A stretch of DNA of 64,000 nucleotides, from contig OZ251233.1 of assembly GCA_965240325.2 (NCBI GenBank), positions 1,736,001-1,800,000 of the forward strand, in the 5' to 3' direction. The position numbers and the translations under genes were made by a program. Under the pieces are notes generated by a model. It was not told the origin of the DNA, searched no databases, and was given only the letters and a program-made list of their open reading frames with translations. Origin of the DNA: Rebecca billardiae RCC1528. Taxonomy: Eukaryota; Protista; Haptophyta. Positions 12,032 through 15,889 of the stretch are shown here, one piece after another (the stretch's first letter is position 1; each line of letters opens with the position of its first letter).

Positions 12032-12888
12032 TCACTCATCGACGCCAGCGGCATATCCACCCAGGGCCTCAGCCACCGCCCCCTCCCCGCGTGCGCTGCT
12101 GCTGATGGCGTTGGCACCATGCCTCGCATGTAGCAGCGCGCGCAGCAGATACGCAATGGCGCACACGAGCAGCGCGATCACCGCGCTCTGGACGCGCAGC
12201 GCGCCCGGCAGGGGCGCGTCAGGCGTGGGCGCCAAGTCACGCACGTCGCCGTACGGCACGTCGCGCCGCAGGCCCTCGCACGAGTCCGGATGCCCCGCGC
12301 CGATCATGCGCGCTGCATAGTCCTGGCGTAGGTAGCTCGCCGCGCGCTTGCGAGCTTCCGGCTCGGAGTGCGCATCGACGCGTAGGCTGTCGAGCGCGTC
12401 CACGCCCTCGACGAGGACGAAGACGAGCGTGTTTAGCGCGTCAGTCGCCACGCGCAGCAGCGCGCCCGCGTCGATGCCGTCGAGCAGGTGCTGCGCATCC
12501 TCGTCCACGCACGCCTGTCCGAGCTGCATCAGCCGTTCTGCCGTGCGCTTCGTGAGCAGCTGCTCGGCGTGCGCGCCAAGCGTCTCGCGTATCTCGGGGA
12601 TGCGCTTGAGGTTGTTGGGGTGGATGCCGCGGTGCTGCACGGTGATGAATCTGGTCAGCACCGCCGTCGCCTCCGTGGAGATCTGCGCGCGACGCCGCGC
12701 AGGCGGTCAGCTTGCACGCTGGCGCGTGCGCGGGGCATGCGGTGTGCGCAGGGACGCGCGGCACTCACATCGGGATCGACGCGCTGCAAGAGCCTTGCCA
12801 CAGCGTCCATTGAGCGCATGTGCCGCTCGCGCGCGTCGTCGACCTCGTCCTCGTCCTCGATCGCGTCGAAGCGGCTGTAGTCCACCAT
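12032..12888 (-). CDS. Hypothetical protein with MVDYSRFDAI N-terminus (intron 12768-12683)
   Basis: The ATG at 12888, a GTGAGT donor and a CAG acceptor join in frame to the 12032..12661 ORF. The N-terminus resembles the Cdc37-like 'DYS.FD.I' motif. Confidence 0.65.
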
Positions 12889-13105
12889 GCTGCTCGCGCC
12901 GATCGCGCCCACGCGGAACGCCTGCTTTTGCCGCCAAGAACCGCGGTCCGGATTCGGCGATTTCAAGTTCCCGAAGACCCGGACGTGAAACTGTGCGCCG
13001 CCTGCACACCTCCACCGCCGCGCCACCGGCCCACCGCCAGACGCCGACGGTCAGACAGTAGAACGCGCGGACCAACTACGCCAGCTATTTAACAGTCTGA
13101 CATCG

Positions 13106-14864
13106 TCAGCGCTGCGCCTCCTTCGCTCGCAGCTCCTCCAGCTTGGCGAAGGTCCCCGTCGCGAGGATCTCGTCGATCTTGTCGGCCGTGCCCTTGCCGA
13201 CGCCGTCCACCTTGGTCGCCTTGGCGATGAGCGTCTTCCCCTCCTTGATCTCGTACTCGAGATTCATCAGCCCGGAGACGGCCTTGCGCGTGCTCGCGGC
13301 CGCGTGCCGCCCGTCCTCTGCGCGCGCGGCGGCGGAGGCGGCGGCGGTGGCGGTGGCGGTGGCAGCAGCATACCACGCACCCGCGCGCGCGACACGATCA
13401 GCGTCCGGCCGCGCTCCGCCGCGCTCCGCCGCGCTCCCCGGCGTGCGCGCACGCAGCGGCAGCCGTTTGTGTGATGGGCTGCGGGCGCGCGCGGGTGTGC
13501 GCGTGCGCGCGCACCGAGATTCTGCACCAGGTCGGCGTACTCCTTGAGCAGCGTGCAGATGGTGGCGTTCTTCTCGTTGCGGCACTTCAGCTCCTTCTGC
13601 ACCTTGCGCGGGAACTTGCGCTTGAGCTCCTTCAGCGCGGCCGCCGGGTCGACGTCACCGTCGTCACGGATGGTGGCCTGAAGCGCCGTGCCCGCCGCGA
13701 TCAGCGCGGACGGCTCGTCGTCCGGCAGGCTGAGCTCCTGCGCGCGCGCGAGCTCGACGAGGCGCGCGGCGGCGGCGCGGCGGTCGAGCCCTTCGAACTC
13801 GGACGCGTCGAGCTTCGCCTCGCCCTTCGCCTCGCCCTTGCCCTCGCCGCCCTCGCCGCCGTCCTCGCTCTCGCGCTTGCCCTCGTGGGGCTGTCGCCAC
13901 CGGTGCCGCTGCGAGCGCAGCTGCGCGCTCTGCGCTTTGTACCCGCACTGCGCGCGGGGCGGGCCGCCGCGTGGGGGCGCACGCGAGGCTCAGCGCGGCG
14001 CGGCGCGGACGCGCCCGCGCCGCGCGCCCGCGCCCGAGCGCGCCCCTCAGCGCGCGCACGTTCACCCACGCGCTCAGCGTCTCGGAGTAGTGGCCTCGGC
14101 ACTCGAATGAGCCCGCCTCCTTCTCGCAGCGGCGCAGCCTGCCCTTCTCGCACATGGGGCAGTCGGGGAGCGCGCCGTGGAGGTCGCCGTCGACGCAGAG
14201 CGAGACCAGCTCCGGCTTCGGCCCTGCACACGCGCGCCGCCCGCCGACGGGGCCGCGGCCGCTGAGCGCGCCGCGCGCGACCACGGCTCGCATGCGCAAG
14301 GCACAGGACCGCGCTGCCGCCTCGCGCGCACCCGTCTTGACCTGCCGGTTCACGTCGAGGAACTCCTTGAGCGCGGGGATCGGCATGCTCGCGTACTTGG
14401 TCCACGCCTCTGCGAAGCCCGGCTCGCCACAGTTCGGGTCGCTGCTCGGCGGATCGTCCGCCGACAGGCGCGGCTTCTTGGCGGCCGACTTGAGGCTGCC
14501 GCCGCACATCTCGTCGATGCTCGCCTTGTCCTTGGGCTCCAGTGTGTCGTACCCCTCGATGCTCTCCGCCTGCGCGTGCAACAACACGCGTCAACGTCCC
14601 CGCGCCGGCTCAGCGCGCGCCCGGAACGCGCGCGTGGCCGCGCGCGCGCGCGCGCGCACTCGCGTGCTTCGGTGCGCGCACCTCGAGCACCTCCTTCTTG
14701 GGCTGGGGCATGCACGCCGGGTGGTACCAGGAGGTCATCTCCGCGTCGCCCTTGGTGAAGACCACGCCGATGCGCAGCTCGCCCTTGTCGAGCTTCTGCT
14801 TGCACTTCTTGCACGCCGACCGGTTGGACTTGGCATATTCCGCGACGCGCTTGGAGCTCGACAT
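13106..14864 (-). CDS. zf-PARP + PADR1 (PARP Zn3) + Pol-beta-type HhH (HHH_8) fusion protein; exons 14864-14682, 14569-14332, 14223-14060, 13947-13515, 13317-13106
   Basis: AEYAKSNRSACKKC...WYHPAC matches zf-PARP. DGDLHGALPDCPMC...FECRGH...WVNC matches PADR1. KVDGVGKGTADKIDEILATG matches the Pol beta 8-kDa domain. All four introns are GT-AG and phase-compatible. Confidence 0.85.
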
Positions 14865-14978
14865 GGCGGTCGCGCCCTCCTCGGTCGGCCACCCGCTCAG
14901 CCTGCGCCACCCGCCACCCAAAGAGTTGAGAGTCCGGGCGCGATCATTTTTCGGTAATCTTTTTATTTGCGCCGATGA

Positions 14979-14990
14979 TTTTGGCGGGAA
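14979..14990. promoter_or_regulatory. Candidate E2F-binding site TTTTGGCGGGAA
   Basis: Matches the E2F consensus about 115 bp upstream of a DNA-repair-type gene. Confidence 0.35.
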
Positions 14991-15295
14991 CGCAGCAGCA
15001 CGAGGCGCGGCCAAGCCGCGCGCGCTTCCTTTGTGGTTCGGCGGCGCGCACGCGTGCGCCTGCTTGACCGTTTGCAAACGCAAACGAGGGCAAGGGTCGG
15101 TTGCCCGATTTCGTCGTATTGGTCCTAAATCGACGTGGTTCTTTCACTGTGTTGTGGTCGCGCCGAAAAGGAAGCGCCCTCAACGTTGAAGCGCTGGCCA
15201 GTCACGATTCAGCGGTTCAACCTGACCCAAACTGGCCGGTTTGAGACTGCCCGTCCGACGAGATACCCGCCGTTCACTCCGCCGCGCCAGCCGCC

Positions 15296-15889
15296 ATGCA
15301 GCCGCACATCGCCCTCACGTTTGCCGTGCTCGCGCTGGCCTCCACGCCAACGCGGGTTAAGGCACACCGTGCGCGCGCGCTTGTCACAACTCGCTCGCCC
15401 TCGCTCACCCGCGCGCGCGTCGTGTCGTACAAGGACGGCACTGAAGACGACGACCTGCCGACACCGGATGTCTTCCCGCCCACGCCGGAGGAGGACACGT
15501 ACGACGAGATGCACACGCTGCTGCGCCACGGACCGATCGCCTTCTTCCACCGAGTCATCAGCAAAGGCGAGTACGAGCGCGGTATCGAGATGTTCGCGCT
15601 GCGCACGGGCTGCTCCAAGAAGGTCGCACAAGGGAACATCGATGCGGCGCTGGCCGACCCCAACTCGTGGGTGTTCAACAAGCTGCACGCCGACGACACG
15701 AAGGAGCCGGACTACGCCAACGTCAACTCGAAGCCGCACCAGCTGGCCCTTACCGCGGCGTGGGGTCTTGGCGTGACTTCACTCATCGTCAAGGCTGCAT
15801 GCGGTGTGCCCATTTGGCTTGGGAACCACCCCGACTGGCAGGACTACTGCGCAAAGCTTATGAGCGGCATCCCCAACATCTTCCACTAA
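15296..15889 (+). CDS. Hypothetical protein with signal peptide and one TM helix, possibly plastid-targeted
   Basis: Hydrophobic N-terminus followed by a basic S/T-rich segment, coding-like codon usage, and a C-terminal hydrophobic helix. Confidence 0.75.
   Translation: MQPHIALTFAVLALASTPTRVKAHRARALVTTRSPSLTRARVVSYKDGTEDDDLPTPDVFPPTPEEDTYDEMHTLLRHGPIAFFHRVISKGEYERGIEMFALRTGCSKKVAQGNIDAALADPNSWVFNKLHADDTKEPDYANVNSKPHQLALTAAWGLGVTSLIVKAACGVPIWLGNHPDWQDYCAKLMSGIPNIFH

What the first reader, a model, noticed from the sequence alone, without database searches (positions are those of the whole stretch)
13106..14864. PARP break-sensor fingers fused to a stand-alone Pol-beta dRP-lyase domain, with no PARP or polymerase catalytic domain
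Seen: five exons give a ~410-aa protein with zf-PARP, PADR1/Zn3, a helical linker and a terminal HhH (KVDGVGKGTADKIDEILATGTFAKLEEL), followed directly by a stop. Known: Pol beta reads [26 protein letters not shown] and its Lys72 is the dRP-lyase nucleophile. The equivalent Lys is retained here, while the Tyr39-equivalent appears replaced. PARP Zn1 and Zn3 sense strand breaks. Inference: a nick-targeted 5'-dRP lyase or end-binding adaptor that joins two base-excision-repair modules in an architecture I do not know to be characterised.
Basis: partly seen in the sequence, partly recalled or inferred. Interest (0 to 1): 0.75.

Follow-up and report, generated by a model that had tools for sequence, protein, structure and literature searches.

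The report
PARP fingers fused to polymerase-less lyase domain

Summary
A five-exon minus-strand gene (14864..13106, 1230 nt, 409 aa plus TGA, all introns GTGCGCGC..CAG) encodes, in order:
- one zf-PARP finger;
- an NLS-like linker;
- a PADR1/Zn3 domain;
- a low-complexity linker;
- a small three-helix bundle;
- a complete Pol X 8-kDa (HHH_8) domain, followed by a stop.

A transcript-derived ortholog from Chrysoculter rhomboideus (409 aa) is colinear across all four junctions and ends at the same residues. No catalytic exon is therefore missing.

The gene is not a one-off. A profile search found 143 representatives at E<=1e-30. Named members come from haptophytes, diatoms, a labyrinthulomycete, a green alga and a choanoflagellate. 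None of 43 scanned members carries a PARP catalytic, WGR, BRCT or polymerase domain. I found no paper on this architecture, and databases call members "hypothetical" or, wrongly, "PARP".

The lyase reading is only partly supported.
- The Lys72 equivalent is kept here, but five of the seven Pol beta lyase-pocket residues are changed.
- Lys72 is Lys in only 63 of 109 family domains.

My best reading is a bipartite nick/gap-binding sensor or adaptor, with dRP-lyase activity possible in this lineage but untested.

The spliced protein was not joined. Exons were searched by reference and the ortholog served as proxy.

The parts
14682..14864 (-). Exon 1 (61 aa). It starts at the ATG at 14864 and holds the zf-PARP finger core with all four CCHC zinc ligands and both phosphate-grip arginines.
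   Evidence: Pfam zf-PARP 62.4 bits against a 39.3 cut-off. Family profile aligned to PARP1 Zn1/Zn2. tblastn with P0002 residues 2-54 gives 75% identity.
14332..14569 (-). Exon 2 (79 codons plus 1 base). [quoted passage not shown]
   Evidence: Colinear with P0002 63-137. The family profile aligns contiguously to PARP1 133-360. AKK is invariant in alignment A1.
14060..14223 (-). Exon 3 (2 bases plus 54 codons). It holds the PADR1 helical part and the zinc ribbon with Cys 1-3.
   Evidence: Pfam Zn_ribbon_PADR1 21.3 bits, E 2.4e-4. Four Cys are invariant in 43 relatives. The profile hits the PARP1 Zn3 structure 2riq at E 2.7e-11.
13515..13947 (-). Exon 4 (144 codons plus 1 base). It holds the fourth zinc-ribbon Cys (first codon), a Gly/Glu/Lys low-complexity linker, a small three-helix bundle (exon residues about 45-115), and helix 1 of the 8-kDa domain.
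   Evidence: Translation. The AF2 model of this exon, built with the family alignment, has pLDDT 95+ over residues 50-110. Fold searches give no significant match: best Z 5.6, UBA-like/EF-Ts-like.
13106..13317 (-). Exon 5 (2 bases plus 69 codons plus TGA at 13108-13106). It holds helices 2-4 of the Pol X 8-kDa domain, including the HhH.
   Evidence: Pfam HHH_8 36.6 bits against a cut-off of 30. phmmer hits Pol beta residues 36-92 at E 3e-6. In the ortholog model, 82 residues superpose on Pol beta at 2.2 A with 34% identity.
13178..13180 (-). AAG codon for the Lys equivalent to Pol beta Lys72, the Schiff-base nucleophile.
   Evidence: HMMER alignment of exon 5 to Pol beta. This column is Lys in 63 of 109 family domains.
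14570..14681 (-). Intron 1 (112 nt, GTGCGCGC..CAG).
14224..14331 (-). Intron 2 (108 nt, GTGCGCGC..CAG). It is open in frame, which explains the ORF-derived database entry P0001.
13948..14059 (-). Intron 3 (112 nt, GTGCGCGC..CAG).
   Evidence: The chosen donor gives W-x-x-C spacing, as in P0002 and PARP1.
13318..13514 (-). Intron 4 (197 nt, GTGCGCGC..CAG). It splits the 8-kDa domain.
   Evidence: The junction is colinear with P0002.

Best explanation
This is a real, intact gene for a nuclear DNA strand-break-binding protein. It belongs to a widespread, uncharacterised protist family. The N-terminal half is the PARP1-type break-recognition module: one CCHC zf-PARP finger, an NLS-like basic linker, and the Zn3/PADR1 domain. 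The C-terminal end is a polymerase-less Pol X 8-kDa domain. A flexible low-complexity linker and a small three-helix bundle lie between the two.

The most likely mechanism (inferred) is bipartite binding. The finger grips the backbone and exposed base step at a nick or end, as in PARP1 and DNA ligase III. The 8-kDa domain binds the 5'-phosphate (or 5'-dRP) downstream strand, as it does in Pol beta. The protein would thus recognise nicks or short gaps from both sides and act as a sensor, protector or adaptor, possibly recruiting partners through the helical bundle.

The function conserved across the family is DNA binding rather than catalysis. In this haptophyte lineage the Schiff-base lysine is kept, so some 5'-dRP/AP-lyase chemistry remains possible.
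For: Shown:
- The gene model has canonical splice sites and an exact 409-codon frame.
- The transcript-derived ortholog is colinear and has the same C-terminus.
- Domains pass Pfam cut-offs exon by exon and in the ortholog.
- The family profile hits PARP1 residues 133-360 at E 1e-25 and Pol beta 11-91 at E 3e-15.
- The AF2 model of the ortholog has pLDDT 89.6. Foldseek matches it to PARP1 Zn1/Zn3, Zn2, the Lig3 finger and the Pol beta 8-kDa domain.
- Of 43 relatives, 43 have HHH_8, 30 have zf-PARP (the rest are N-terminally truncated entries), and none has a PARP, WGR, BRCT or Pol X palm domain.
- The zinc ligands are invariant and the two phosphate-grip Arg are invariant in A1.
- In the 8-kDa domain the DNA-binding positions are well kept: Lys41 89/118 rows, Lys61 100, a Lys at position 67 in 82, Gly64/66/80 in 95-109, Lys/Arg84 in 87. 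The nucleophile Lys72 is Lys in only 63/109.
- In this protein five of the seven pocket residues are changed.
- The genome has its own zf-PARP+PARP gene on C1 and a canonical Pol X on C18, so this gene is an additional factor and not a broken copy.

Inferred: the two-sided binding geometry and the adaptor role.
Against: No binding or activity data exist for any member. Lys72 is retained in this lineage, and Tyr39+Lys72 are retained in about 45 of roughly 100 family domains, including 12 with the full Lys35/Tyr39/Lys72 triad. An ancestral, and perhaps present, lyase activity is therefore not excluded. The middle bundle has no significant structural match (best Z 5.6), so the adaptor role is conjecture. 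Inter-domain geometry was not assessed.
Confidence: 0.5

Rival explanations
1. It is an active, nick-targeted 5'-dRP (or AP) lyase. The PARP-type fingers deliver a catalytically competent stand-alone 8-kDa domain to incised abasic sites. The conserved Lys forms a Schiff base and removes the 5'-dRP independently of any polymerase.
For: The Lys72 equivalent (codon 13180-13178) and the His34 and Lys84 equivalents are kept. The whole four-helix domain is present and superposes on Pol beta at 2.2 A. In Pol beta the lyase activity resides in the 8-kDa domain (PMC8782244). Twelve family domains keep the full Lys35/Tyr39/Lys72 triad and 31 more keep Tyr39+Lys72, which suggests an ancestrally active pocket.
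Against: In this protein Glu26->Val, Ser30->Glu, Lys35->Ala, Tyr39->Thr and Lys68->Gly. Lys35, Tyr39 and Lys72 are the residues called critical for lyase activity (PMC2241857). The nucleophile is replaced by Ile, Leu, Thr, Tyr, His or Arg in about 40% of family domains, including named diatom members. Catalysis is therefore not what selection holds constant.
Confidence: 0.33
2. It is not primarily a repair factor. It would be a chromatin or transcription-associated DNA-binding protein that reuses the finger, the SAP-like PADR1 helices and the HhH as generic DNA-binding modules.
For: Six of 43 members match the Pfam SAP domain. Polymerase-less 8-kDa domains occur in other architectures: tandem repeats in P0096, and a 1377-aa ORF with a DnaJ-like region in this genome. 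This suggests the 8-kDa domain serves as a general module in these protists.
Against: Both terminal domains come from families whose characterised members recognise DNA breaks. The contiguous Zn-finger-to-Zn3 arrangement is otherwise specific to PARP1.
Confidence: 0.12
3. It is an artefact: a mis-modelled gene, a truncated PARP1 or Pol X pseudogene, or two adjacent genes read as one.
For: The very high GC content produces many spurious ORFs. The database entry P0001 for this locus is an intron read-through ORF.
Against: Transcript-derived orthologs of 399-500 aa are colinear end to end in several phyla. Splice sites are canonical and the frame is exact. The next minus-strand ORF opens at an ATG at 12889, which leaves 13105-12890 (about 216 bp after the stop) without assigned coding sequence.
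Confidence: 0.03

Closest known systems
PARP1 N-terminal DNA-break sensor (Zn1/Zn2 zf-PARP fingers plus Zn3/PADR1)
   Same: Same CCHC finger with both phosphate-grip arginines, a basic NLS-like linker in the same position, and the Zn3 helical part plus four-Cys ribbon. The family profile aligns contiguously to human PARP1 133-360 (E 1e-25). Foldseek finds PARP1 Zn1-Zn3 and Zn2 structures.
   Different: One finger instead of two. There are no BRCT, WGR, helical or ADP-ribosyl-transferase domains, so it cannot make poly(ADP-ribose). Database names such as 'poly ADP-ribose polymerase' for members are misnomers.
DNA polymerase beta / lambda 8-kDa dRP-lyase domain (Pfam HHH_8)
   Same: Complete four-helix domain with the HhH. 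34% identity and 2.2 A rmsd over 82 residues for the ortholog. The Lys72, His34 and Lys84 equivalents are kept here.
   Different: No fingers, palm or thumb follow; the protein stops 12 residues after the Lys84 equivalent. Lys35, Tyr39, Lys68, Glu26 and Ser30 are replaced. There is a four-residue insertion before the HhH.
Other zf-PARP-plus-effector repair proteins: DNA ligase III (finger + ligase) and plant ZDP (fingers + 3'-phosphatase)
   Same: Same logic: a PARP-type nick-sensing finger tethered to a DNA-end-processing module. The Lig3 finger is a 57-bit match. ZDP appears among the profile hits through its fingers.
   Different: The effector here is an 8-kDa domain, not a ligase or phosphatase. 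This family also carries Zn3/PADR1, which Lig3 and ZDP lack (the latter point is my own knowledge of those proteins).

Membership tests
zf-PARP finger (PF00645) | Pfam score above the gathering cut-off | tested here: met
   62.4 bits against 39.3 for exon 1 alone. 58.3 bits in ortholog P0002.
zf-PARP finger (PF00645) | CCHC zinc ligands and the two backbone-grip arginines | tested here: met
   The C-x2-C ... H-x2-C motif is read directly in exon 1. Both Arg are invariant in A1 and align to the PARP1 Arg positions.
zf-PARP finger (PF00645) | Hydrophobic base-stacking loop | tested here: inconclusive
   The loop is shorter than in PARP1. An invariant Met precedes the Trp-x-His, but its equivalence to the PARP1 stacking residues was not established.
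PADR1 / PARP1 Zn3 | Four-Cys zinc ribbon preceded by the helical subdomain | tested here: met
   Four Cys are invariant in 43 sequences. The profile hits the PARP1 Zn3 structure 2riq at E 2.7e-11. The Pfam score itself is below cut-off (21.3 against 25.1).
Poly(ADP-ribose) polymerase (enzyme) | WGR, regulatory and ADP-ribosyl-transferase catalytic domains | tested here: not met
   Absent from all five exons, from P0002 and from 43 relatives. PARP catalytic hits in this genome lie on other contigs.
Family X DNA polymerase | Fingers, palm and thumb nucleotidyl-transferase core after the 8-kDa domain | tested here: not met
   A stop follows the 8-kDa domain, and the ortholog has the same end. No Pol X palm is found in relatives. 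The genome's two palm hits are on C1 and C18.
Pol beta-type dRP lyase | Schiff-base nucleophile Lys72 | tested here: met
   Lys at the aligned position. However, it is Lys in only 63/109 family domains.
Pol beta-type dRP lyase | Supporting pocket residues Lys35, Tyr39, Lys68, Glu26, Ser30 and His34 (listed in PMC2241857) | tested here: not met
   They read Ala, Thr, Gly, Val, Glu and His respectively; only His34 is kept (plus the ungapped extension into exon 4). A Lys sits at position 67, next to the lost Lys68.
Pol beta-type dRP lyase | Measured dRP-lyase activity or borohydride trapping | not testable with these tools
   Needs biochemistry.

The most novel reading that the evidence does not exclude
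The family is a polymerase-independent, break-targeted 5'-dRP/AP lyase. That would be a previously unrecognised stand-alone base-excision-repair enzyme, built from a PARP1-derived sensor and a Pol X-derived lyase domain. It would be ancient enough to occur in haptophytes, stramenopiles, green algae and choanoflagellates, with catalysis secondarily lost in many diatoms, where the protein persists as a pure break binder.
Probability: 0.3. Interest if true: 0.75.

Novelty: new variant of a known kind. Interest (0 to 1): 0.58.

Why it matters
All well-studied systems keep the Pol X 8-kDa domain attached to a polymerase, and the PARP1 Zn3 domain attached to a PARP catalytic core. This family breaks both rules. 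It is also common in ecologically dominant marine protists.

If it binds nicks or gaps from both sides, it is a new type of single-strand-break sensor or adaptor. That matters in lineages where I detected no XRCC1 N-terminal domain and no ligase gene next to a zf-PARP hit (this genome; weak negative evidence).

If it is catalytically active, dRP removal is uncoupled from gap filling in these organisms. It also corrects database annotations that call members PARP1.

Tried and rejected
1. Word-based protein search with the ortholog and with the 43-sequence profile returned only 3-4 hits, because low-complexity words saturated the candidate list. The exhaustive HMMER search was needed.
2. The search for related loci on viral contigs with A2 failed: no conserved 7-10-column stretch. 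Presence in giant viruses is untested.
3. PF08063 against the whole genome found nothing, not even this gene, so it is uninformative.
4. The middle three-helix bundle gave nothing usable. Foldseek had no hit at E<=0.001, VIA-align's best Z was 5.6 (UBA, EF-Ts N-terminal and clamp-loader lid folds), and the ESM Atlas gave no usable hit. I do not call it a UBA domain.
5. Neighbouring ORFs (12035-12661 minus, 12767-12889 minus, 15296-15886 plus) have no Pfam match, so they give no repair-gene context.
6. The MMETSP header taxid 87120 for P0026 resolves to a fungus. I did not use that organism name.
7. The idea of a missing downstream polymerase exon was rejected, because the orthologs end at the same residues.
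All searches used single exons by reference, one listed ORF that reads through the in-frame intron 2, or database orthologs.

Full report
**Gene model**

The region lies in a 64-84% GC window of a 72-Mb, 41-contig eukaryotic genome. On the minus strand an ATG at 14864 opens a gene of five exons:
- exon 1, 14864-14682
- exon 2, 14569-14332
- exon 3, 14223-14060
- exon 4, 13947-13515
- exon 5, 13317-13106

The exons sum to 1230 nt, which is 409 codons plus TGA. All four introns (112, 108, 112 and 197 nt) begin GTGCGCGC and end CAG.

For intron 3 two in-frame donors were possible. I chose the GTGCGCGC one because it restores the Trp-x-x-Cys spacing seen in the ortholog and in PARP1 Zn3.

The next minus-strand ORF opens at an ATG at 12889, so 13105-12890 (about 216 bp after the stop) carries no assigned coding sequence. 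A plus-strand ORF starts at 15296. The gene is therefore bounded on both sides.

Each exon was searched by reference.

**Domains**

Exon-wise Pfam results:

| Exon | Pfam family | Score | Cut-off |
|---|---|---|---|
| 1 | zf-PARP | 62.4 bits | 39.3 |
| 3 | PADR1 zinc ribbon | 21.3 bits | 25.1 |
| 5 | HHH_8 | 36.6 bits | 30 |

The PADR1 score is sub-threshold because the fourth Cys is the first codon of exon 4. The quoted HhH peptide and the direct stop are there.

**Independent support for the splicing**

The listed ORF 13664-14587 reads through the in-frame intron 2. I searched with it, restricted to its real exon 2-3 part. This found P0002, a 409-aa protein from the MMETSP transcriptome of the haptophyte Chrysoculter rhomboideus, with precomputed zf-PARP and HHH_8 domains.

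tblastn of P0002 against the window hits all five exons at 48-75% identity. It crosses each junction as modelled, and both proteins end with the same residues before the stop. The Chrysoculter ortholog and a neighbouring note of this scan (s1-332181) both point to a haptophyte alga.

**The family**

I aligned P0002, the Diacronema lutheri protein P0003 and the Thalassionema protein P0004, and used the profile in an exhaustive HMMER search of 1.84 billion representatives.
- It returned 3715 hits at E<=0.001 and 143 at E<=1e-30.
- Among the 150 best listed, a large share are 400-500-aa proteins matching the profile end to end.

Named members:

| Group | Organisms |
|---|---|
| Haptophytes | Chrysoculter, Diacronema |
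| Diatoms | Thalassionema, Odontella, Seminavis, Mayamaea |
| Labyrinthulomycete | Mucochytrium quahogii |
| Chlorophyte | Pyramimonas |
| Choanoflagellate | Salpingoeca macrocollata |

Source names are "hypothetical protein", "PARP-type domain-containing protein" or, wrongly, "poly ADP-ribose polymerase".

A Pfam census of 43 members gave:
- HHH_8 in 43;
- zf-PARP in 30 (the other 13 are N-terminally truncated entries that I had included);
- SAP in 6, PADR1 ribbon in 5, PADR1_N in 4;
- no other family matched, so no PARP catalytic, WGR, BRCT or Pol X palm, thumb or fingers.

Four literature searches found nothing on this architecture.

**Relation to solved structures**

The 43-sequence profile gave these matches:
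- human PARP1 residues 133-360 contiguously (Zn2, linker, Zn3; E 1e-25);
- Zn1 and the ligase III finger separately;
- Pol beta residues 11-91 (E 3e-15);
- the Pol lambda 8-kDa domain, more weakly.

An AlphaFold2 model of P0002 built with this alignment has mean pLDDT 89.6, with only two short disordered linkers. Foldseek recovers PARP1 Zn1-Zn3 constructs, Zn2 (TM 0.72 on the target) and Pol beta. For Pol beta, 82 residues superpose at 2.2 A with 34% identity.

I modelled the window's own exon 4 with the family alignment. It contains a confident three-helix bundle (pLDDT about 96). Neither Foldseek nor the wide VIA-align search placed it: the best Z was 5.6, among UBA, EF-Ts N-terminal and clamp-loader lid folds. 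That is within the range the tool calls a common arrangement.

**The lyase question**

HMMER alignments to Pol beta, extended without gaps into the end of exon 4, give this map for the window protein:

| Pol beta residue | Window protein |
|---|---|
| Asn12 | kept (invariant in the family) |
| Glu26 | Val |
| Ser30 | Glu |
| His34 | kept |
| Lys35 | Ala |
| Tyr39 | Thr |
| Lys41 | kept |
| Lys60 | Thr (Lys at 61) |
| Lys68 | Gly (Lys at 67) |
| Lys72 | kept (codon 13180-13178) |
| Lys84 | kept |

PMC2241857 names Lys72, Tyr39 and Lys35 as critical for lyase activity. It lists Glu26, Ser30, His34, Lys35, Tyr39, Lys68 and Lys72 as the pocket. PMC8782244 names Lys35, Lys68 and Lys72 as the active-site lysines and places the activity in the 8-kDa domain. 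Two of the seven pocket residues therefore survive here.

- Lys72 is Lys in 63 of 109 with a residue. Elsewhere it is Ile, Leu, Thr, Tyr, His or Arg, for example Leu in Seminavis and His in Mayamaea.
- The Lys35/Tyr39/Lys72 triad reads A-Y-K in 31 domains and K-Y-K in 12. It reads A-T-K in P0002 and, per the map above, in the window protein, and G-T-K in P0003.
- DNA-contact positions are more constant: Lys61 100, Lys41 89, Lys at position 67 in 82, Gly66 109.

I read this as an ancestrally lyase-competent domain whose constant, selected property in the family is DNA binding. The haptophyte copy keeps the nucleophile in a remodelled pocket.

**Genomic context**

The same genome has 11 PARP-catalytic hits. 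One lies 2.3 kb downstream of a zf-PARP hit on contig 1, on the same strand, which looks like a canonical PARP1-like gene. There are also two Pol X palm hits; one lies directly next to an HHH_8 hit on contig 18, which looks like a canonical Pol X. The gene studied here is therefore an extra, single-copy factor and not a remnant.

No XRCC1 N-terminal domain was detected, and no ligase hit lies beside a zf-PARP hit. Because the genome search works exon by exon, this is weak negative evidence.

**Verdict**

- Observation: confirmed.
- Interpretation: partly supported. The architecture is right and uncharacterised, but it is widespread rather than unique, and the lyase claim rests on one retained lysine.
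- Best explanation (confidence 0.5): a bipartite nick/gap binder, with the finger plus Zn3 on one side of the break and the 8-kDa domain on the 5'-phosphate side, acting as a sensor or adaptor.
- Main rival (0.33): a true break-targeted dRP/AP lyase.
- Novelty: a new variant of the known "PARP-type finger plus end-processing module" kind.
- Interest: moderate to fairly high for DNA-repair and protist biology.

Noticed in passing
G000:C13, locus L021:2871-7004 (minus strand): An uninterrupted 1377-aa ORF carries another polymerase-less HHH_8 8-kDa domain (38 bits, residues 542-608) just after a weak DnaJ-like match (20 bits, below cut-off). This is a second unusual use of the Pol X 8-kDa domain in the same genome. 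The high GC content makes long ORFs unreliable, so the gene model is unverified.
   Followed up: partly
Proteins P0096, P0104, P0113 (marine metagenome/Tara representatives): These are proteins of about 350-410 aa made of tandem repeats of the 8-kDa domain with no polymerase core. In P0096 the Lys72 position is Ile in both scored repeats. This suggests the domain serves as a general DNA-binding repeat in some protists.
   Followed up: partly
window 13664-14587 (minus strand): Database protein P0001 (281 aa) is an ORF call on this very locus. It reads through the in-frame intron 2 and then runs out of frame after intron 3. It is an example of prokaryote-style gene calling on eukaryotic DNA polluting protein collections.
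   Followed up: yes
window 13318-14681, introns of this gene: All four introns share the donor GTGCGCGC and the acceptor CAG, and are 79-90% GC. They are richer in GC than the exons, which is a strikingly uniform splice signal for this genome.
   Followed up: partly
window 12035-12889 (minus strand) and 15296-15886 (plus strand): The flanking ORFs have no Pfam match. The downstream one starts with an acidic Asp/Glu-rich stretch, and the upstream divergent one has a signal-peptide-like N-terminus. The 430-bp divergent spacer 14865-15295 is the only AT-richer stretch nearby.
   Followed up: partly
G000 zf-PARP hits at C23:772429, C33:670981, C18:1029202, C19:1540093 and C15:1362253: Five further zf-PARP finger loci lie next to neither a PARP catalytic hit nor a ligase hit. 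Their architectures were not examined.
   Followed up: no
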